This document shows positions 4,704 through 45,730 of a stretch of DNA of 64,000 nucleotides, piece after piece. Position 1 is the first letter of the stretch. Each line of letters starts with the position of its first letter. The notes under the pieces are model-generated. The model did not search any database. It was not told the origin of the DNA and worked only from the letters and a program-made list of their open reading frames with translations. This DNA is from Hyphochytrium catenoides. Its lineage: Eukaryota > Protista > Hyphochytriomycota. A program made the position numbers and the translations under genes. Location: contig FLMG01004242.1 in NCBI GenBank assembly GCA_900088475.1, positions 1 to 64,000 of the forward strand, written 5' to 3'.

Positions 4704-7700
4704 ATGGCGCAACCTCTCACTCCTGAAGCCGCCCGCAAGCTCTTCGGGTATGCAAATGACTTCAAGGAAGGTGATGCTACCATACACGTTGCAGCCCCTA
4801 CAGACGGGGAGAGAGAGAAAGCCCGGGCTCTTCTCTCTTCACTTCGGCTTGGGGACATCAAGAGTGAAGATTTTGTTGAGGATGAAGTGACCATGCTCTC
4901 TAAGAAGGGCCTGGATGACGAGGCTCATCGACGCACCCTTGGTTGGACGGTTGGAGAGCTAAGAGCCTTTCTCCTTCGTGCGCCTGAAGAAGAGATCAAG
5001 GCTGTTGCTGCTGGGCTGACGAGTGAGGTCATTGCTGCTGTGTGCAAGCTCATGACCAACGCAGGTGAGCGAGCAGGGAGAGAAATGAAGTCAGAGAGAG
5101 TATGGATCTTGTGATGGAACCCCACATACAAAGTTAGGATGAAAGAGACAGAAGCGAGAGACGAGAGAGTGAGAGAAAGAAAGAGAATGACCGGGAAAGA
5201 GAGGGATTTAAAGGACAGAGAGAGAAAGAGTAGATAGACAGAGCGAGGAAGAGCGAGAGAGACAGAAAGAGAGCGGAGAAAGAAGGAAAGGGGGAGAGAG
5301 GAGAACAGAGCACAAACGAGTGGCGGTCAACGCGAACTAATAGAGATGAAGGAATGAGAAACTAGGACGGACAAAGGGAAGAGCGTCACATGAGATGTAC
5401 TAGAGAGGAGAGAGAAATCCAGGAGAGAGAAAACCGTGGAAACCCATTGAGCCGCAGGCACACTACTTATCGGTTCTCCTAACAACAGAGCTCAAGACCG
5501 TCTCAAGCAAGATCTACAATCCACTCCCCAATTCGACTGTGGGTGCCAAGGGCTACTTTGGCTCCAGGCTGCAGCCCAACAGTCCCACTGATGGTTAGTG
5601 AAGTCAAGAGAACTAAAAGAGCTAAAGAGAAGTCGGAAAGAGAGAAATAGAGCGAGCGAGAGGACAAGCGAGAGAGAGAGAGACAGGAAGAGAGACAGAA
5701 GAGAGATCGGGGAGGACAAGAGCGAGAGAGAGCGAGAGAGCAAGGGAGACAGTGAGAGAGAAAGAAAGAGAGAGAGGACGTTGAGAAGCCAATCGTGCAA
5801 TCTCTCGCCTTAGTTCAGCGCATTTATCAGTTTCCCTTCGTGTTCTGTCTGTTCCTTAACTACTTTAGAGACTCGTATAGTTATCCTCTTTCTCTCAGCT
5901 GTGATTAAGCCTAATCTTGCGGCCCTTTTGCAGACCCTGAAGAGATACTGTTCGCCACACTAGAAGGCCTTTCATACGGCTGTGGAGACGTGATCCTGGG
6001 CATTAACCCTGTGGCCAGTGATCACCCTAGCGTCACAGCCCTAGAGAAGTGTATGAGGAGGGTCTGGGAAGCCTTCAAGCTGCAGGACAAGACGACCTAC
6101 TGCGTGCTGGTAAGATTAAGGCACATTGTCATACTTCTCTCTACGTTATTCTTCACTGCTCAAGTTCTGGCTTGGGCCTGAGCTTAGCCCGTAACATCGC
6201 GTGTGAACGACCTTTCCGTCTCTTTCCAGGCGCACATTGACGATCAGGCAGCTGTTGATGATGGACAAGGACTTGTGCAATGCCTCTTCCAGAGTATNNN
6301 NNNNNNNNNNNNNNNNNNNNNNNNNNNNNNNNNNNNNNNNNNNNNNNNNNNNNNNNNNNNNNNNNNNNNNNNNNNNNNNNNNNNNNNNNNNNNNNNNCGA
6401 GCATACGGTCTGGCTCGAGCGCTAAAGAAAATGACAGGTTAGGAAAAAAGCAGCAAGGAGGATGATGAGAAAGAGAGAGAGATGAGACGGTTGACCGTGA
6501 AAGTCCCTCTTAATGTGCTCGCAAGAGATTCTCTCTCTCTCTCTTCTCCTTATCTTGGCACATGCAAAGCACTTCCCTGATGTTGTTGGCCTCTGGGTGT
6601 TCCATTCCTGGTTAAGTAACTGTCTTTCTCCTTCCTTCTGCTCCCTCTTCCATCAACTAGGGTCTTGGACCATTGTCAACGATGTAGCGGGATTCATTGG
6701 CCCAGAGGTTTTCCGCTCTCCTGCTCAGCTGACCCGCGCTTGTTTGGAAGATCTGTTCATGGGCAAACTACACGGACTAACAATGGGACTGGATATTTGT
6801 TCCACGTACCACATGGGCGTATCAATAGAGGAGATTGAAAGAGTGCAGGAGGAGGTGATGGAGGCCGGTACGGCTTATTATATGGCTGTTCCAGGACGAA
6901 ACGACCCGATGCTAAGCTATATCACGACGGGCTTTAGAGACCATCCACGGCTGAGGAAAAAGTTTGGAAGGCAAGTGTCGAAGGAGATGAAGAGCTTCTT
7001 TGAGGAGGTTGGGATCATGACTGGCGATGGGGAACTCACGCAGAATGTAAGAAAAATGATGGGAGTACCTCTTCTCGGTGTCTACTTCTAGATTGGCACG
7101 GATTGTTCCTTCAGTGAGGCTATTATATGAGGCTCTATAGCTTGGCTTCGTTCATATCCCCGCCATCACATCTCTTTACGGCGTGCCTGTCATAGGTTCT
7201 GGATCTGCATCTATGGAGCTCATGGCCACTGACCATTTCTTAGACTTACTGCTATTCGCTCTAACCTTGTTGCATACATTATTGCTTCCTTCCAATCTTC
7301 TGATTCCTTTATGATGGATCAGGGAGGAAACACAGCCTATATGTACATGAAGTTAAGACAGGCTGAAGGAGACTCCAGACCTCCTGCTCTTCTTATTGAA
7401 GAGGCAGACAGGACGCTCAAGAAACTCCAAGCCCGAGGTCTAGATCTAGGCTATGGCCACGATGGCACCTACGGAATGCCGTCTCACATTGAAGAGAAGC
7501 TTTTCAAGCTATATAACAACGCCAAAGAGGTCATTTACCTCTCCCTTTCGGAGGGCTTTGAAGAGGTGAGAATGAGAGCTTTAGGTGGTTCATATTTACT
7601 CTCATCACGATTCTCTCAACTTATCTAGCCTAGCTGCCTTCGTTATCTGTCCTATCTGCCTTGATCTCTTTGCTAAAGGCAGACCCTCAATAGTCATTTC

Positions 7701-8915: not shown

Positions 8916-9583
8916 GCCGTATTCTTCCAATTACTGTGCGAGTTGCCTCGACAACCCCTTCACTAGATAGGATAGAGCTTAGGGCAGCCGAGCAGCGACT
9001 GGTGTCATGAAGGCCAGATATATACGACCTGTAAAGCAGAGTAATGAAGAGGATAAATATACCTCTCGCTCAATGATCTCCAATAGGAAGTTAGCCACCA
9101 AACGCCCAAAGCCTTTCCCTTGTACATCATGATAGTGCAATGCAGGTCGGAAGTAGCCCAATATCAAGGCTCGTGATAGACGCCGGGCACCAAGTCATCC
9201 CGGCAATCCAGATGAATAAACTGGTATGGTGGTAGAATGTTGCCACACCGCAGGCTCAACGTACAGAGGATCGGCGGGAGCAGCTGCCGTCCAAATCATA
9301 ATAAACCAAGGGGGAGCGGACAGAGAGATTTTGTGAAGCAGTTTAGAGTAGGTGCGGTGCTTTCTGCGCAGAAAGAAGGAGTGGTAGAATCTTACCCTAC
9401 GTGCAGCTGCATGAATGGGAACTACATGGCTTGGCTTGTAGGGTCAGAAAACTACTGGTCGATTCTGAAGGCAGCAAGAAAGATTGTATGATGATGCAAC
9501 AATACTTGGGCCTTTCATTAATGTTGGACATGAGGTTATTATCGCCTTGCTGGGCCTCTCAGAATGGCCTTTGCGGTGATTAA

Positions 9584-10675
9584 TCAGCAGCAGGCTCCGC
9601 TCGATGTTGCCGGGAGCGGCATGCTCGACTTACTGTCATCGCAAGGGAAGAGGCCAAAGTGCTTAGAACGGTCGCCACTTACGGTGAAGTGATCCTTGAG
9701 ATATGTCTCTGAAAGCATGCTAGCGGTATTGCCACAGACTAGAAGAGGCTTATGAGCCTCAAAGCTGTGCTTCTCATCAAGGACGTAAAGTTGCTCATGA
9801 CCGCGAATTGTTCCCTTGTAGACCGCGACTTGACCATAGTCTTCACAGGTGGTCTCCAAGGTATCAAGTTTAAAAAGCCTGAAAGTCATTGAGTAGAAGG
9901 TCACGGCCGGCCCTACAAGCTGACTCAGCTCCTCGTCGATAATGTCAATAGGCGTACAAGATACCCGGCGAGGGTCGGTGAACCCAACTTGATGACATAG
10001 TCGATAGAAGTCTTGCACGTACAGAGCACCCCCAAGACATTCCCCAAGCATAACTTCATGACTTTTGAGCTCCTCTGAAAGCCGCCTGGATGCAAAACAG
10101 TCAGAGAAGAAGAACTCTCCTCCCGGCTTCAGGAGGTCGTACACTCCTTTCAGCACGAGGTCTTTTCGAGGCGACAGGTTGAGCACACAATTGGAGATAC
10201 AAAGATCAATAGTTTCTGCTTCCAGGCCAGTCTGAGAGAGAAACTCGATAAGTCCTTTCTGAAAACTGAGGTTTGGCTCCCAGCCTAGGTTAGCAGCGAA
10301 GGCCTTGATACTTTGCCTTGCTGTAAGGAGCTGTTCATCGGTCATATCGACGCCAATCACCTTGCCCTTCGGACCCACAAGCGCTGCGGCTACATAACAA
10401 TCTTGACCCGATCCTGAGCCTAGGTCGAGAACTGTGAGCCCTTCAATGCCGCCAGGTAAGACGGAGCCGCAACCATAGTACTTGGCCTTCACCTCCTTCG
10501 GAACGAGCTGAAGAAGTTCAAGGATCTGTCTGGTTGGTTTAGTCTTGTTGGTGCATGCACTCGTCTTCAGATCGCTGGTTGAGCTCAACACTCGTCCGTA
10601 GTACTTTTGGACTGCTTCGTGCTGCTGATCCGATGTTGCATCTTCCTGGATAGAGCCGCCTTTTTGCTCGACCAT
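9584..10675 (-). CDS. arsM: Arsenite S-adenosylmethionine methyltransferase (ArsM/AS3MT), 363 aa, no intron in the CDS
   Basis: VQKYYG..LKTSAC, YYGCG, LDLGSGSGQDCY (SAM-binding motif I), GVDMTDEQL, ISNCVLNL, LKPGGEFFFSD, GECLGGALY, FRLFKL, CEDYGQVAVYKGTI, VCGNTA, HFGLF and a C-terminal CC. The As-binding cysteines typical of the family are present. Confidence 0.96.
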   Translation of the reverse strand: MVEQKGGSIQEDATSDQQHEAVQKYYGRVLSSTSDLKTSACTNKTKPTRQILELLQLVPKEVKAKYYGCGSVLPGGIEGLTVLDLGSGSGQDCYVAAALVGPKGKVIGVDMTDEQLLTARQSIKAFAANLGWEPNLSFQKGLIEFLSQTGLEAETIDLCISNCVLNLSPRKDLVLKGVYDLLKPGGEFFFSDCFASRRLSEELKSHEVMLGECLGGALYVQDFYRLCHQVGFTDPRRVSCTPIDIIDEELSQLVGPAVTFYSMTFRLFKLDTLETTCEDYGQVAVYKGTIRGHEQLYVLDEKHSFEAHKPLLVCGNTASMLSETYLKDHFTVSGDRSKHFGLFPCDDSKSSMPLPATSSGACC

Positions 10676-11174
10676 CCTTTCTACCTTGTTGTTGAAGGGT
10701 TCTGTTCTGGAAGGATGCTACTGGGGCTCGCCGCGTCCTAACACCTTGGTATTTCAAGGCTGGGAAAACGCGAGAAGAAGGTCCGATGTTCTTGTTGGCG
10801 GATGCCTGCTGGTAGCCTGCTGGTGGGGAAGCTGATCTCACACGGACACGCGCAGGGAGAGGAAGACCGAGCCAATACTCCGCCGTGCTCGTACTACCTG
10901 GAAAGAGGATTAAATCAGAAACTCACTTCGCGCAGCAGACATTGGGAAAGAGAGTCTCTCTCATCATCAAATATTATCATTGGTCACTGCCTTCTACTCT
11001 CGTTCTCCACACCATTAGCAGCTTCAGGACCATCCTCTTCCCTCTTCAACTGGTGCCATTGATCACCGCTGCTGTGCTGCTGCTTCAGGACTCCTCGCTC
11101 CCTTCAAAGATATGTCTTGAAGATGTTGGAAACTCTATGAACGAAACCTCCTCCTTAGCCCCACCTCGTCCCCC

Positions 11175-11510
11175 TCATATAAATCTATAGGGGAAGGTTT
11201 CAATGAAAGGTTTCGATAAAAGAATGTGCAAAGTATATTTCCTCCCTACCGCAGAGCGGTAATGAAGCTTTCAGTCCATTCCATAGTTACCTGGAAAGAT
11301 TCTTCCAACAGGAGGAGGTTATTCTTCCGCCCTCATCTCCTGTGAACTTGCGTAGTATCTCTTCGTCTTTGGAATGTGCGACGGCCCATCGTCGCTGAAG
11401 AAAAGATTCTCACTTTCTAGGATGCTCATCATTGTTCTTTGCTCATTCTCTGCCATCCTGGTGGCCGAGTCTTTGGTCTGGTCGGCTCTCTGGGCTGGCT
11501 CATCACTCAT
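11175..11510 (-). CDS. Candidate small spliced protein (51-60 aa) between arsM and arsS
   Basis: ATG at 11510 in ccaccaATG context. Donor gtgaga at 11413 with acceptor at 11367 (aag) or 11340 (cag), both giving the same frame. Second intron 11290-11185 (gtaact...cccctatag). Product MSDEPAQRADQTKDSATRMAENEQRTMMSILE(NEEILRKFTG or R)DEGGRITSSCWKNLSRFI*. No family recognised. Confidence 0.45.
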
Positions 11511-11913
11511 TGGTGGTCGCCTGTTGCAGCAGGAACTTACTCCCTGACGAGTGTAGGTGGTAGCAAATAGAAGTACTAAGGCGGTTCCTCGTCGGAAGCA
11601 GGCAGCACGAGGTCCTTCTCGCGCAGGTGGCGAGTGGAAGAGGTCCAATCGCTATGACGGCGAAGAATGCTAAAGATAAGAGCAAGCTTTGACGCGACGG
11701 TGATCTAGGAAAGATCCTCTCGCTGAGACGACAACAGCATCAGGCACACAGCTTGAAGCCTCTTCCTCCACCTTGAAGGGAGAGTGGTGTGGGCAGGAGC
11801 CGGAAAAAGTGGAGCTGAGGATTGCCTGGAAAAGATTTATTTGACTGCGAAAGGCTAATAAAGGGCAAAAGCTAGGACTGCTTCCTACTCTGAATACACC
11901 CGACTTGTTAACG

Positions 11914-13597
11914 ATGTCCAGCCTCAGCTTGCGGCTCGCTGTCCTACGAGGAGGTGGTTACTACGCCCCTGCCTCTGTGCCGCTGCCAACAATGCTGTCC
12001 ATGAGTTGTGCGACAAGGAATAGCCATCCCCGTCTCGGCTGGGGGCAACCTCTTCGCCCACTGTCCACAGCCACAACCCTCGCCTCCACAGAGCTTCAAG
12101 CAAAGCGTGAAGAGAGAAAGCAAAGACGGCGCTCTCTTGAGCAGCACACTAACAATATTCCGCCGTTCAAGGACTTTCTAATGCAAAGCCACGCCTCATT
12201 GACGCGGCGAGCTACTGAGGTTTTTCAGATGAACATCGGACTCTATTGCAACCAAACGTGCAGTCACTGCCATGTGGAGGCCTCACCACAGAGAAAGGAG
12301 ATGATGAACAGGGCTGTGGCGGAAAAATGCTTGGACATAATCTCCAACAGTAAGACCGTTAAAACCCTTGACATCACAGGGGGAGCGCCAGAGCTCAACT
12401 CGCAGTTTCACTTTCTGGTTACTGAGGGAAGGAAAATGGGACTGGAGGTGATCGACCGATGCAACCTCACAGTACTCTTCGAAGAAGGTCAAGAGGTACG
12501 TGCATGAGAGAGCTTTCAATGTTCCACACTCGTTCTCCTCCTGTTCACGCCTCAGATTGTTAATGAATGCCTTCCTTCGCCTTGTTGTCTCTTCCTCACC
12601 ACCTCAGAACCTCAAAGATTTTCTTGCTGAGAACGGCGTCCGAATTGTGGCCTCGCTGCCTTGTTATTCGTCGGAGAACGTGGATAAGCAGCGAGGGAAA
12701 GGTGTTTTTGATAAAAGCATCAAGGCATTGCAGCTATTGAATAGCTACGGGTGGGTGTCGGCGGCTAGAAGTGGTTAAAAGGATGTTGGTCCGTAGGCCT
12801 ACACTGGGCTAACGCTCGCCCCTGATCGTCCGCAGCTACGGGAAGGCAAACACTGGGCTCATCCTCGACCTTGTTTACAATCCAGGAGGAGCTTTTCTAC
12901 CTGGCAACCAAGAGTCGCTAGAGCAGCAGTATAAGGTAATAATATTGCTTTGAGAATCTATGGGAGGGGGGGAGGAGAGAGAGGGAGGCTCCGAGACTCT
13001 AACAACACCCCTGCCTGTCTTCTTGATTTTTTGATCCTCATTAGAGCTTCCTGCAAAGTCATTTTGGCATTGAGTTCAACACATTGTTCACCCTGGCCAA
13101 CATGCCTATCAAGAGGTTCGCGGACTATCTTCGGCGAAGAAACGAGCTGAGCTCCTATATGAAGCTCCTGGCGGAGAGTTTTAATCCAGCCACGGTGCCT
13201 CACCTGATGTGCACCAACTACGTTAGCGTGCGATGGTGAGTTCTTGTCGCTTGTGTTTCTCGCTATTGTGAACCATAACAACACGGCGATAATAACGTGT
13301 TCGATTGAAGGGACGGGTCTGTGTATGACTGTGACTTCAACCAGCAGCTTGATTTGCCAGTGATGGCCAACTCTAGCACAAGAAGACCACTCAGCGTGTT
13401 TGATGTATGCTGTACGGATGACATCCTTGAGCAGAAAATCAGAGTCGCCTCACATTGTCTGGGGTAGGTGTGGCTTTTCATTTACCGTTGAATGGCGACT
13501 CACTTCTTCCTTTGCCTTTGGTCTTTCTCTTATCAGATGCACTGCCGGGAGTGGGTCTAGTTGCCAGGGGGCAGCTGTGAAGCAGGCTGCCATCTGA
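11914..13597 (+). CDS. arsS: Arsenosugar biosynthesis radical SAM protein ArsS, 6 exons
   Basis: Exons 11914-12495, 12608-12750, 12836-12935, 13045-13235, 13311-13463, 13537-13597. Motifs: QMNIGLYCNQTCSHCHVEASP (CxxxCxxC), LDITGGAPELN, IDRCNLTVL, VASLPCY, NVDKQRGKGVF, LDLVYNPGGAFLP, FGIEFNTL..NMPIKRF, LMCTNYVSVRWDGSVYDCDFNQQL, HCLGCTAGSGSSCQG. Confidence 0.95.
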
Positions 13598-14991
13598 GTC
13601 TAGACGACTTCATCCGTTTGCCGGCGACAACGACCGAGAAGCATTGCAAGATCATCAGCATCTTTTTTTGGAGTCGAGTATTTGACAAAGATCAGACAAT
13701 CTTGTTGTACTTCATCTCAACAAGGGGAAGGACATCAGCTTTATTTTCAGGATCACCTAGCACAGGCCCAAGGCGGGATCATGGATAGAGGAAGACGGGG
13801 GTTACCAATCGTTGTACAAAATTCGGAGCGCCGTGGTGTTGATCGTATCGCCTCTAGAGCTCCAAGACCGACGCATGGGAGCCCATGGTTTTCCCAGGAT
13901 GGTGAGCTTCCAACAGTCTTCTACATCCGCCGTAGCCGCAAAGAAGATATAAGCTAGCCTCCGTTCGCTGAACGAAAGTTTGCTCAAAATGGCGCTAATA
14001 ATCGTCTTTTTATTATCTCTGCAGTGAACCACGGATAAGAACTCATATACGCTGTCCCTGAGAATCAATAAAACTTTGCTGCGGACTTTGCTGCGTCTCC
14101 CAAGCGTAGCGTTTTTGTGGGTGACACGACCGATCAGCCTCGACAGGGCTCCCTGCGTGCCCCTTCTCAATCAAACTCCGCACCACCTCCTCTTCATTCT
14201 TAATAGCTTAAGCATGTCGGCGGGTAGTCAAGTCCATTCGTCAGACGAGAGTAGGAGTCAATATGCTGCATAGGTCATTGTTCGAAAGTGGGTGGAATTC
14301 CGCTTCTGGTGGCCGGCCAACATTCTCAAGCTCCTCCATTCCTCCTATAGGCTCTTACCTGAAGAGTACTACCACTATTGTCATGCATGCCACCAAAAAA
14401 ATCAAGAGAATCTAGAGACCATCGCCATGATATTTGTTGCAAGCGCACTAAGACAGCTTTTGACAACAGCATTCAGGTGACGGTGTGGCGGCGGGTAGTG
14501 ACTCAGCTTGCTGAGACGACATGATGGTAGGAAGCTGATCCCGGCACGACGAGGGGCTGCGTTAGTAGGGTAGGGAAGTAGTCGGAGAAAAGAGAGGAGG
14601 CAGGAGAAGCAGCAGCGGGTTGAGGAGGTACCGGCGGTCAATGGCGCCTGAAGAGGAGAAAACGACAAGCTGAGGATGACGAGCCGTGGTCCCCAGACCG
14701 ATCCTTCAATATGCTGGTGGTGGTTGGCTGTTGTTGTGGGCACAACCTTTGGAGGAACACAGAAGAAGAAGAGGGAGGATGCCTCCTTCTAGGCTTCTGG
14801 TCTGCTACATACTTCCTTGCCGCCTATGGGCGCCTATGCTGCTGCTTTCCACGACCAAGACAGGGACCAACCCAGAAGGAGGGCGGGGCTCCTTGTTGGG
14901 TGCCGCCGCAAGCTTCTTGCTGCTCAATCATCCATCATCCACGCCGCTGCTTCATTCTGTTGCTTCGGCCACACTAATCAATTTAAAACGC

Positions 14992-15031
14992 NNNNNNNNN
15001 NNNNNNNNNNNNNNNNNNNNNNNNNNNNNNN
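14992..15031. other. Assembly gap (40 N)
   Basis: Run of N. Confidence 0.99.
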
Positions 15032-43595: not shown

Positions 43596-45730
43596 TTAGT
43601 TGTTGAACTTGAAGAAGATAATGTCGCCGTCTTTGACCTGACACAACAGAAGAAGCAGGCATTAGCATGGTCCTACTACATTAGCAGCAACAACAAACTG
43701 TTGCTTACCTCATACTTCTTCCCTTCCATACGTAGCTTTCCGGCCTTTTTCACCGCTTCCTCGCTACCAACTGAAGTAGGGCGCAATTAGCCGAGAGTTC
43801 GACGTTATGTATGGAACGTATAAGGCCAAAAAACAGAGCAGGATGGTCATAAGCAACGGGAAGAGAGGTCAAAGTAGAGACAGCCACTTACGCTCTTTAA
43901 GGTCTTCATAGGACTGCACCTCGGCCATAATAAATCCCTTCTCGAAATCCGTGTGAATGACGCCAGCGGCTTGGGGTGCCAGCCTACCCTTTCTAATAGT
44001 CCAAGCCCTGACCTCCTGTTTGCCGACAGTAAAGTAATGGATAAGACCCAGACACTGGTATCCGGCTTTCAGCACCCGAGGCATGGTTGAACGAGACTCT
44101 GGGTTATCTTTCTTGAACTGCTCCAGCTGTCCTGAGGCTTCCAGATCCATCCACTATACAAGGGACAATACCACCGGTGACGCAGAGCAAGTGCAGATGT
44201 GTGAGTCGATGTGTGAGTCGTAGTGAGAGCTACCCTGCTGGCAATTTGACTATCAAATCATAGCGTGCTCACCTCTAACTCAAACTCGCAACTAATTGGA
44301 AGGATCGGCTCATCCATGCCGCGGGCCTTCACAGCCTCGGCAATTTTGGGAAGCCACTTGTTCTTCTTACGCAAATAATCTATGCGTCGCCACCCCATCG
44401 CCGCATGGGAACGAGAGATAACAAGGATGTTAAGACCAACAATATGTTCGAGAAAGTTTGGACTGGACCCCAAACACTTCTTAAAGGAAAGAAGCGCCAA
44501 AGCAAGCACGGAGAAGATGGCCAACGAAGCAGGGACACAGGGAGCTAGTTACCTTTTTTGCTTAGATTGACAAGGTATACCATGGGCTTGGCAGTAAGAA
44601 GCTGATAAGTATTAAGTACGTCCACCTGCATAAAGCAAGGATAACAGCATATTGAGCAAGCCTAAAGATACTAAATTTCCCTTTCTATAGGCGCCTGGCG
44701 CGAGCTTACCTCATACGCTGTCCAGTCCCCTGTCCTGACATCCTTGCCGTCATCCTTAATGTGCTTGAGAACCTTGCATAGAGCTTCAAACTCCTGCTTC
44801 TTCTCCTTCCCACCTACACCTCTCTCAACATTCTTTCTCATGCCATCGACGGTGTTCTGGATGAGCTCGATGTCCTAAGGAGGGCGTGTAACACAAAGAG
44901 AGGGAATAGAGAAACAAGCCAATACAAGTAAGGGGGAGTCATTCGTTCATACTTGAGCATGCTGCTCTACATAAGCTCTTGAGCTCCAGTTACCTTCAAT
45001 AATAGCTCTTGATGGATGATCTCGATATCACGAATGGGGTCAACGCCTCCTATGGGACAATAAGCTGTGTCAGCACTAACACTTGGCAGAATATGAGCCT
45101 GATGAAGCTTGCCTTCTACGTGAGTGATGTCGTCACTGTCGAAGGCGCGGAGCATATGGTAGATACCATCCACTGCGCGAATATCTGCCAGAAACGCGTT
45201 ACCTAGACCAGCGCCCTCGCTGGCGCCTTTCACAAGTCCTGCAATATCAGTCGTCGTGATGACTGGAGGAACCCTATTACAGGAAAGAGTTGCTTTATCG
45301 TTAACATGCTGATAGCCGATATTCCATGCAGCGTTGGACAAACCTGCTCAACGGCTGGTACTTCTCACAGAGCCAGTTGAAGCGCTGGTCCTGTACGTGT
45401 AATCAAAGGTCAATACCGCATCTCACATCGCTTAAACACCTTACGTTGCATGATCACCTACCGGTACGGGAACTTGTGCCACATGAGGATCAATTGTGCA
45501 GAAAGGGAAGTTCTCAGCGGGTATGTTCAGCTTGGTCAAAATGTTAAAGAAGGTGCTCTTTCCAACGTTAGGCAATCCTACAATTCCCATCTTCACGTTG
45601 TTGCCGGGTCGGCCGAGGTAGGCCCTCTTGACGGGTGCATCCTGCAAGAAGTTTCAGCACGCGTCTTATCTCCTTTGTTTGGTTTCAACACCGGTAAAGA
45701 GGATGGACCAACCTTCTTCTTAGGCGGCAT
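43596..45730 (-). CDS. OLA1: Obg-like ATPase 1 (OLA1/YchF), multi-exon
   Basis: MPPKKK|[33 protein letters not shown]...[92 protein letters not shown]. Confidence 0.97.

What the first reader, a model, noticed from the sequence alone, without database searches (positions are those of the whole stretch)
9584..13597. Eukaryotic head-to-head arsM-arsS arsenosugar biosynthesis cluster
Seen: arsM (minus strand) and a 6-exon arsS (plus strand) are divergent, with start codons about 1.24 kb apart. Established: in cyanobacteria such as Synechocystis, arsM and arsS are adjacent. ArsM makes dimethylarsenic, and ArsS adds the SAM-derived 5'-deoxyadenosyl group to give dimethylarsinoyl-adenosine (DDMAA), the arsenosugar precursor. 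Inference: this eukaryote keeps consecutive pathway steps as a co-regulated metabolic cluster. The spliceosomal introns in arsS and the eukaryotic flanking genes argue against bacterial contamination.
Basis: partly seen in the sequence, partly recalled or inferred. Interest (0 to 1): 0.85.

Follow-up and report, generated by a model that had tools for sequence, protein, structure and literature searches.

The report
Head-to-head arsM–arsS gene pair
A protist genome carries its arsenic-methylating enzyme gene and the intron-split gene for the next enzyme of arsenic-sugar synthesis back to back, 1.24 kb apart; bacteria keep these genes in one operon, but none of twelve other eukaryotic loci examined shows them together.

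Summary
An intronless 363-aa arsenite methyltransferase gene (minus strand, 9584-10675) faces a six-exon, 409-aa ArsS radical-SAM gene (plus strand, 11914-13597). Their start codons are 1,239 nt apart, with no assembly gap between them.

Both proteins carry their family hallmarks. ArsM has the four catalytic cysteines. ArsS has the CX3CX2C motif, the DUF3641 domain and the C-terminal CTAGSGSSC motif.

In quick trees each falls inside a eukaryote-only clade (SH-aLRT 99). Codon usage matches neighbouring genes. Contamination and recent operon transfer are therefore excluded.

Pathway logic and the low chance odds of adjacency (about 1e-4) favour a functional pair. However, 12 other eukaryotic loci show no partner within 10 kb. 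All 40 linked prokaryotic pairs but one are co-directional and none is divergent. So this layout is not simply "kept" from bacteria.

Co-regulation could not be tested, because no RNA run was listed. ArsS has a presequence-like N-terminus and ArsM has none, so the two steps may run in different compartments.

I found no description of a eukaryotic arsM-arsS pair in the searchable literature. This is a new variant of a known linkage and is of moderate interest.

The parts
9584..10675 (-). arsM: intronless gene for an AS3MT-type arsenite S-adenosylmethionine methyltransferase, 363 aa plus stop
   Evidence: ORF. Pfam Methyltransf_31, 8.4e-29. NCBIfam arsenite methyltransferase models are the best hits. 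PDB 5evj Chlamydomonas ArsM at E 1.6e-109 over residues 16-354, and CmArsM 4fr0 at 2e-83. Cys41, Cys69, Cys163 and Cys213 are conserved.
10676..11913 (.). 1,238-nt divergent intergenic region; presumed shared or back-to-back promoters (inferred)
   Evidence: No Pfam family in its ORFs. The 63-aa minus-strand ORF 11322-11510 was not recognised by the Atlas. Only short, chance-level repeats. No oomycete-type INR/FPR match.
11914..12495 (+). arsS exon 1: presequence-like N-terminus (aa 1-59) and the radical-SAM core with C112-x3-C116-x2-C119
   Evidence: TIGR04167, 128.1 bits over model positions 2-99. Pfam Radical_SAM. Gene model.
12608..12750 (+). arsS exon 2
   Evidence: TIGR04167, 68.5 bits over model positions 94-150. 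GT-AG borders.
12836..12935 (+). arsS exon 3
   Evidence: TIGR04167, 33.1 bits over model positions 148-180.
13045..13235 (+). arsS exon 4 (start of DUF3641)
   Evidence: DUF3641, 7.7e-17. TIGR04167, 59.4 bits over model positions 194-244.
13311..13463 (+). arsS exon 5 (DUF3641, CDFNQ motif)
   Evidence: DUF3641, 1.6e-06. TIGR04167, 29.2 bits over model positions 248-290.
13537..13597 (+). arsS exon 6: C-terminal CTAGSGSSCQG motif (Cys, not selenocysteine) and stop codon
   Evidence: Sequence. Matches the invariant columns C319 T320 A321 G322 S325 S326 C327 of alignment A1.

Best explanation
This is a genuine, functionally coupled divergent gene pair of a eukaryote.

Proposed mechanism:
- ArsM, with no targeting extension and so probably cytosolic, methylates arsenite with SAM. 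It uses its four cysteines and works through methylarsenite to dimethylarsenite.
- ArsS, a [4Fe-4S] radical-SAM enzyme with a presequence-like N-terminus, then attaches the SAM-derived 5'-deoxyadenosyl group to dimethylarsenite. The product is 5'-deoxy-5'-dimethylarsinoyl-adenosine, the first committed arsenosugar intermediate.
- The two genes are transcribed outwards from a 1.24-kb shared intergenic region. This would allow common, probably arsenic-responsive, control.

Both genes are old eukaryotic genes, not a fresh bacterial import. The head-to-head layout is specific to this lineage. It arose either by secondary juxtaposition or as a rearranged remnant of an ancestral operon.

Shown here: gene structures, family membership, catalytic motifs, eukaryotic ancestry and adjacency. 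Inferred: enzyme activities, compartments, shared promoter and selection for adjacency.
For: - Gene models and motifs.
- ArsS exon pieces sum to about 318 bits on TIGR04167 (cut-off 300). Clade mates score 410-440 bits.
- The spliced ArsS is 54% identical to P0228, which NCBI names ArsS.
- In the ArsS tree, the window, 30 named eukaryotes and 7 unnamed sequences form one clade against 39 bacteria (SH-aLRT 99).
- In the ArsM tree, the window lies inside a eukaryote-type clade (SH-aLRT 99).
- Prokaryotes link the same two families. 17 of 80 metagenome loci with the closest ArsM-type genes carry ArsS. 24 of 80 genomes with ArsS carry an ArsM-like gene within 6 kb.
- Biochemistry and co-transcription in Synechocystis: PMC13598754 and bioRxiv 10.1101/2022.09.23.509062.
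- Immediate adjacency of two named genes among roughly 15-20 thousand has chance odds near 1e-4 (my estimate).
- There is no assembly gap between the genes, and GC3 and codon usage resemble those of four other ORFs of the window.
Against: - No expression or co-induction data: no RNA run was listed.
- None of 12 other eukaryotic loci has the partner within 10 kb, so there is no evidence that selection maintains the linkage.
- The presequence-like ArsS N-terminus against a bare ArsM suggests different compartments.
- No shared regulatory motif was found in the spacer.
- No eukaryotic ArsS has been assayed, as far as the searchable literature shows.
Confidence: 0.6

Rival explanations
1. The adjacency is incidental. 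Both genes are functional eukaryotic arsenic genes, but they came to lie side by side by neutral rearrangement. They have independent promoters and no selective or regulatory coupling.
For: No linkage in 12 other eukaryotic loci spanning green and brown algae, a xanthophyte, a diatom, a cryptophyte, a chlorarachniophyte, a plasmodiophorid and three uncultured eukaryotes. The orientation differs from every prokaryotic pair seen. A 1.24-kb spacer is long enough for two separate promoters. Foflonker & Blaby-Haas (PMC7826186) found ArsM outside the arsenic neighbourhoods of nine green algae.
Against: The prior probability of two consecutive pathway genes being immediate neighbours is about 1e-4. 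Earlier, unchecked notes report two more arsenic-related gene pairs in the same genome, which suggests a non-random pattern.
Confidence: 0.25
2. The eukaryotic ArsS-clade enzyme does something other than arsenosugar synthesis, such as another radical adenosylation. In that case the neighbourhood with ArsM says nothing about a pathway.
For: The clade is conserved in animals and many protists. It carries N-terminal modules absent from bacteria. No eukaryotic member has been assayed in the literature searched.
Against: Clade members score 410-440 bits on the equivalog model TIGR04167, against a cut-off of 300. All invariant motif columns of alignment A1 are kept in the window protein. The adjacency to ArsM repeats the bacterial association.
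Confidence: 0.08
3. The locus is a bacterial contaminant, a recently transferred bacterial arsS-arsM operon, or an assembly chimera.
For: Both families are mainly prokaryotic, and their closest bacterial relatives are often operon partners.
Against: arsS has five GT-AG introns. Both proteins nest in eukaryote-only clades at 55-63% identity to many eukaryotes, against 45-55% to bacteria. Codon usage and GC match the host. The orientation is not operon-like. There are no N gaps between 6398 and 14991.
Confidence: 0.04

Closest known systems
Cyanobacterial/bacterial arsM-arsS (arsS-arsM) operon, e.g. Synechocystis sp. PCC 6803
   Same: The same two enzyme families are encoded side by side, and they catalyse consecutive steps: As(III) to DMAs(III) to DDMAA. 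ArsS keeps the CX3CX2C motif, DUF3641 and the C-terminal Cys motif.
   Different: Here the genes are divergent, not co-directional or co-transcribed. arsS has five spliceosomal introns and a 59-aa presequence-like extension. ArsM is the long AS3MT type of the eukaryotic clade, not the NF038099 'arsenosugar ArsM' type that accompanies many bacterial ArsS genes at 25-36% identity.
Eukaryotic ArsS-clade proteins (annotated 'Fe-S oxidoreductase' or 'DUF3641 domain-containing protein' in Ectocarpus, Guillardia, Tribonema, diatoms, green algae, amphioxus, echinoderms)
   Same: 55-63% identity and the same clade. They share the N-terminal extension habit.
   Different: In the ten such loci examined, no ArsM gene lies within 10 kb. 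The window protein lacks the 'TPDFNT' N-terminal motif that many of them share. It sits on a long branch (0.78).
Eukaryotic arsenic gene neighbourhoods of green algae (arsBHC-like and ArsJ-GAPDH-PGK; Foflonker & Blaby-Haas 2020, PMC7826186) and the yeast ACR1-3 cluster
   Same: Physically linked arsenic-handling genes in a eukaryote, with bacterial-type ancestry of the components.
   Different: Those clusters are about efflux and reduction. ArsM was explicitly outside them, and none contains ArsS.
Chlamydomonas reinhardtii ArsM (PDB 5evj) and Cyanidioschyzon CmArsM (4fr0)
   Same: Full-length alignment (E 1.6e-109 and 2e-83). The SAM-binding domain, the C-terminal domain and all four cysteines are present.
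   Different: Sequence identity to the nearest database relatives is only 58-62%. The window protein ends in a short Cys-Cys tail.

Membership tests
ArsS, arsenosugar biosynthesis radical SAM (seleno)protein (NCBIfam TIGR04167 / Pfam DUF3641) | Radical-SAM CX3CX2C cluster-binding motif | tested here: met
   C112-NQT-C116-SH-C119 in exon 1. Aligns to the invariant C49, C53 and C56 of alignment A1.
ArsS, arsenosugar biosynthesis radical SAM (seleno)protein (NCBIfam TIGR04167 / Pfam DUF3641) | C-terminal DUF3641 domain with the DCDFNQ motif and the HC-x-GCTAG-x-GSS-[C/U] motif | tested here: met
   DUF3641 hits on exons 4 and 5. YDCDFNQ and HCLGCTAGSGSSC are present, with Cys at the Sec/Cys position.
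ArsS, arsenosugar biosynthesis radical SAM (seleno)protein (NCBIfam TIGR04167 / Pfam DUF3641) | Score at or above the curated equivalog cut-off (300 bits) | tested here: inconclusive
   The spliced protein could not be submitted by reference. The exon pieces give 128.1+68.5+33.1+59.4+29.2 = 318 bits as a rough sum, without exon 6. Clade mates P0167, P0241, P0276 and P0348 score 425, 440, 421 and 410 bits.
ArsS, arsenosugar biosynthesis radical SAM (seleno)protein (NCBIfam TIGR04167 / Pfam DUF3641) | Groups with ArsS proteins in a tree and not with other radical-SAM families | tested here: met
   54% identity to P0228, which NCBI names ArsS. Nested in the ArsS tree. The next-best NCBIfam family on exon 1 scores 29.7 bits against 128.1. 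No non-ArsS outgroup was included in the tree.
ArsS, arsenosugar biosynthesis radical SAM (seleno)protein (NCBIfam TIGR04167 / Pfam DUF3641) | Catalyses 5'-deoxyadenosylation of DMAs(III) to DDMAA | not testable with these tools
   Activity is known for the bacterial enzyme (PMC13598754). No eukaryotic assay was found.
ArsM/AS3MT arsenite S-adenosylmethionine methyltransferase (EC 2.1.1.137) | Class I SAM-binding Rossmann domain | tested here: met
   Pfam Methyltransf_31, 8.4e-29, residues 79-227.
ArsM/AS3MT arsenite S-adenosylmethionine methyltransferase (EC 2.1.1.137) | Four conserved cysteines (CmArsM C44, C72, C174, C224) for As(III) binding and the disulfide cascade | tested here: met
   TSAC41, YYGC69GS, SNC163V and GEC213LGGALY align with the CmArsM and CrArsM motifs. 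The residue numbering of CmArsM is from my own knowledge.
ArsM/AS3MT arsenite S-adenosylmethionine methyltransferase (EC 2.1.1.137) | Full-length three-domain architecture, including the C-terminal domain | tested here: met
   Aligned over residues 16-354 to residues 21-361 of 5evj.
Bacterial ArsM subfamily models (NCBIfam NF008823; NF038099 'arsenosugar biosynthesis ArsM') | Score above the curated cut-off | tested here: not met
   155.7 bits against a cut-off of 263 for NF008823, and 89.9 against 400 for NF038099. I therefore do not file it under these bacterial subfamilies. It belongs to the eukaryotic AS3MT-type clade.
Prokaryotic arsS-arsM operon | Genes co-directional and co-transcribed | tested here: not met
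   The window pair is divergent. 40 of 41 prokaryotic pairs are co-directional, one is convergent and none is divergent.
Eukaryotic metabolic gene cluster | Adjacent non-homologous genes for consecutive steps of one pathway | tested here: met
   The two genes are immediate neighbours as far as can be told. Nothing recognisable lies in the 1,238-nt spacer. There are only two genes, and no third pathway gene lies in the window.
Eukaryotic metabolic gene cluster | Co-regulation of the members | not testable with these tools
   No RNA run was listed for this stretch, so read laying could not be used.
Eukaryotic metabolic gene cluster | Linkage conserved in related genomes | tested here: inconclusive
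   Absent from 12 distantly related eukaryotic loci. No close relative of this organism was available: the best ArsM hit is 62% identical and the best ArsS hit 63%.

The most novel reading that the evidence does not exclude
The pair is a rearranged relic of a bacterial arsS-arsM operon that entered an early eukaryote. It survives as neighbours only in this lineage, which earlier notes call an oomycete-like, probably non-photosynthetic stramenopile. Together with the TIGR04282/TIGR04283 transferase pair reported elsewhere in the genome, it would give a heterotroph a complete, arsenic-inducible arsenosugar pathway driven from a bidirectional promoter.
Probability: 0.15. Interest if true: 0.7.

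Novelty: new variant of a known kind. Interest (0 to 1): 0.45.

Why it matters
Arsenosugars and arsenolipids dominate arsenic speciation in marine food webs. Yet only the bacterial ArsM and ArsS steps have been shown biochemically, and the eukaryotic genes are unstudied. In databases they are labelled 'Fe-S oxidoreductase' or 'DUF3641'.

A physical arsM-arsS pair in a eukaryote is independent genomic support that the eukaryotic ArsS clade works with ArsM. It also offers a compact 4-kb unit, with both genes and the spacer, for expression and promoter tests.

It adds a case to the small list of eukaryotic arsenic gene neighbourhoods. The value is limited, because the linkage was seen in one genome only and nothing is known about its expression.

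Tried and rejected
- RNA evidence: the look-up of sequencing runs listed no RNA run for 9400-13800, so read laying was never used.
- Close relatives: the metagenome scan with ArsM gave at most 57% identity. The protein searches gave at most 62% for ArsM and 63% for ArsS. Synteny in sister taxa could therefore not be tested.
- Rfam on the whole window: no match.
- Spacer content: its ORFs have no Pfam family. I found no support for it, but could not exclude it.
- Oomycete-type INR/FPR core-promoter pattern, recalled from memory: no match in the spacer. Repeats in the spacer are short and at chance level.
- Shared intron positions with eight other eukaryotic arsS genes: mapping by tblastn was approximate and incomplete. 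At most one position (about aa 390, shared with Guillardia) may coincide. Inconclusive.
- Viral origin: only one partial ArsS-like hit in 2.9 million viral contigs. Rejected.
- Other ars-neighbourhood genes in the window: all ORFs of 90 aa or more from the ~165 metagenome, bacterial-genome and viral loci then held were searched against the window with tblastn. Only arsM, arsS and an unrelated YchF/OLA1 gene matched.
- Xue et al. 2019 (PMC6467767) is not held. I could not check what it says about eukaryotic orthologues.
- A solved ArsS structure: none in the PDB copy.
- I did not run the search of protein representatives or structure prediction. The spliced ArsS has no reference, and neither step would change the verdict.
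Full report
**What is there**

The minus strand holds one uninterrupted 363-codon ORF at 9584-10675. Its product has a Methyltransf_31 domain (8.4e-29). Its best NCBIfam hits are all arsenite methyltransferase models. It aligns over residues 16-354 with the crystal-structure sequence of Chlamydomonas ArsM (5evj, E 1.6e-109), and with Cyanidioschyzon CmArsM (4fr0, 2e-83). The four cysteines that define these enzymes are present at positions 41, 69, 163 and 213. It has no N-terminal extension.

On the plus strand I rebuilt arsS from the sequence. There are six exons: 11914-12495, 12608-12750, 12836-12935, 13045-13235, 13311-13463 and 13537-13597. The five GT-AG introns are 112, 85, 109, 75 and 73 nt long. 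Together the exons give an in-frame 409-codon reading frame.

The exons hit NCBIfam TIGR04167 (ArsS) in order along the model. The bit scores are 128.1, 68.5, 33.1, 59.4 and 29.2, and Pfam DUF3641 is also hit. The spliced product is colinear, without indels at any junction, with a 12-sequence ArsS alignment. It keeps the invariant CX3CX2C, DCDFNQ and HC-x-GCTAG-x-GSSC columns.

The start codons are separated by 10676-11913, which is 1,238 nt. The nearest assembly gaps are at 6298-6397 and 14992-15031, so the pair lies in one continuous stretch.

**Is it eukaryotic, and how old?**

The ArsM protein is 58-62% identical to a wide range of eukaryotic proteins. These include Plasmodiophora, Chlorokybus, chlorarachniophytes, Blastocladiella and a bicosoecid. 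The spliced ArsS is 55-63% identical to proteins of brown algae, diatoms, cryptophytes, chlorarachniophytes, green algae and also animals. It is 45-55% identical to bacterial ArsS.

In a 77-row quick maximum-likelihood tree, the window, all 30 named eukaryotes and 7 unnamed sequences form one clade against 39 bacterial rows (SH-aLRT 99). The window sits on a long branch (0.78) at the unresolved base of that clade. In a 92-row ArsM tree the window lies inside a eukaryote-type clade (SH-aLRT 99), again unresolved within it.

GC3 and codon usage of both genes resemble four other ORFs of the window. Members of the eukaryotic ArsS clade score 410-440 bits on TIGR04167, against a cut-off of 300. Contamination, a recent operon transfer and a viral origin are therefore excluded. 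Both genes are long-resident eukaryotic genes.

**Is the linkage inherited or conserved?**

In prokaryotes the two families are often linked.
- 17 of the 80 metagenome loci with the closest ArsM-type genes carry a full ArsS. 16 of these are co-directional, usually with arsS 16-130 nt upstream of arsM, and one is convergent.
- 24 of 80 bacterial genomes with ArsS have an ArsM-like gene within 6 kb, and all are co-directional.
- None is head to head.
- In Synechocystis the genes are co-transcribed (bioRxiv 10.1101/2022.09.23.509062).

In eukaryotes I examined ten ArsS-centred and two ArsM-centred loci. They come from Apatococcus, Dunaliella, Sphacelaria, Ectocarpus, Tribonema, Nitzschia, Guillardia, Amorphochlora, Plasmodiophora and three uncultured eukaryotes. 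None has the partner within 10 kb, or within the available contig, by annotation or by tblastn. In [Myrmecia] bisecta the two proteins sit on contigs of different length. Foflonker and Blaby-Haas likewise found ArsM outside the arsenic neighbourhoods of nine green algae (PMC7826186).

So the layout is lineage-specific and not a simple retention. No close relative of this organism was in any collection, so conservation among sister taxa is untested.

**Why the pair still looks meaningful**

ArsM supplies dimethylarsenite. ArsS adenosylates it to DDMAA (PMC13598754). Immediate adjacency of two specified genes among some 15-20 thousand has a chance probability of about 1e-4. This is my estimate, and it stays small after allowing for a few dozen arsenic-related pairs that a reader might have flagged.

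Earlier, unchecked notes on this genome report two more arsenic-related pairs on other scaffolds. One is TIGR04282 with TIGR04283, and the other is an aquaglyceroporin with ArsC. I could confirm only that TIGR04283 and TIGR04282 genes follow ArsS in bacterial loci L107 and L135.

The spacer shows no recognisable gene and no informative motif. No other bacterial ars-neighbourhood gene lies in the window.

**A complication**

The first 59 residues of ArsS contain several arginines and no acidic residue. They precede the conserved region, so they look like an organellar, probably mitochondrial, presequence. Many eukaryotic ArsS proteins, animal ones included, have comparable extensions. ArsM has none. 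The consecutive steps may thus run in different compartments. This is inference only.

**Verdict**

The functional reading is plausible. 'Kept' and 'co-regulated' are not shown. The searchable literature holds no description of a eukaryotic arsM-arsS pair, or of eukaryotic ArsS at all. The key paper, Xue et al. 2019, was not available. I rate this a new variant of a known linkage, of moderate interest. The scan had noted this same stretch only as the present finding.

Noticed in passing
Proteins P0287, P0316, P0319, P0331, P0348, P0349, P0356; tree: ArsS-clade proteins are annotated in animal genomes: Acanthaster, Antedon, Sycon, Apostichopus, Branchiostoma and Mya. The Branchiostoma protein scores 410 bits on TIGR04167, against a cut-off of 300. 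The animal sequences group together (SH-aLRT 96), along with one uncultured-eukaryote sequence (P0134), inside the eukaryotic clade. This bears on whether marine animals can make organoarsenicals themselves rather than only taking them up from food.
   Followed up: partly
Eukaryotic ArsS N-termini: Many eukaryotic ArsS proteins share a motif like 'TPDFNT-V-V' ahead of a conserved basic helix (LT-EER--RRR-L). Bacterial ArsS has no N-terminal region of this kind (bacterial proteins align to the window protein only from about residue 80-96). The window protein has the basic helix but not the motif. The diatom N-termini look like signal peptides with an ASAFAP-like cleavage site, which suggests plastid targeting there.
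   Followed up: no
L094:6996-7841; L107:3821-8490; L135:6746-10577; L097:7743-9278: Genes next to bacterial ArsS include an MTAP-like 5'-thioadenosine phosphorylase, which could remove adenine from DDMAA. They also include a MerA-like FAD oxidoreductase (NF004991) and the TIGR04283 and TIGR04282 'arsenosugar glycosyltransferases'. None of these has a homologue in this window.
   Followed up: partly
P0001 / L005:10001-13353: The best ArsM hit, from Plasmodiophora brassicae, is a 587-aa protein with two methyltransferase domains in tandem.
   Followed up: no
P0091: A 519-aa transcriptome protein ('Hpha') combines a low-molecular-weight phosphatase/ArsC-type domain (PF01451) with ArsM. This looks like an arsenate reductase-methyltransferase fusion.
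   Followed up: no
window 6513-7091 (+): An EutB (ethanolamine ammonia-lyase large subunit) C-terminal exon (4.9e-46) lies in the same gap-free stretch. It is convergent with arsM and is the subject of another note on this window.
   Followed up: no
window 43899-45599 (-): A multi-exon YchF/OLA1-type GTPase gene.
   Followed up: partly
whole window: The oomycete-type INR/FPR pattern (up to 3 mismatches) occurs 53 times, against 36 expected. Only 1 of 100 shuffles reached 53. None of the matches falls in the arsM-arsS spacer.
   Followed up: no
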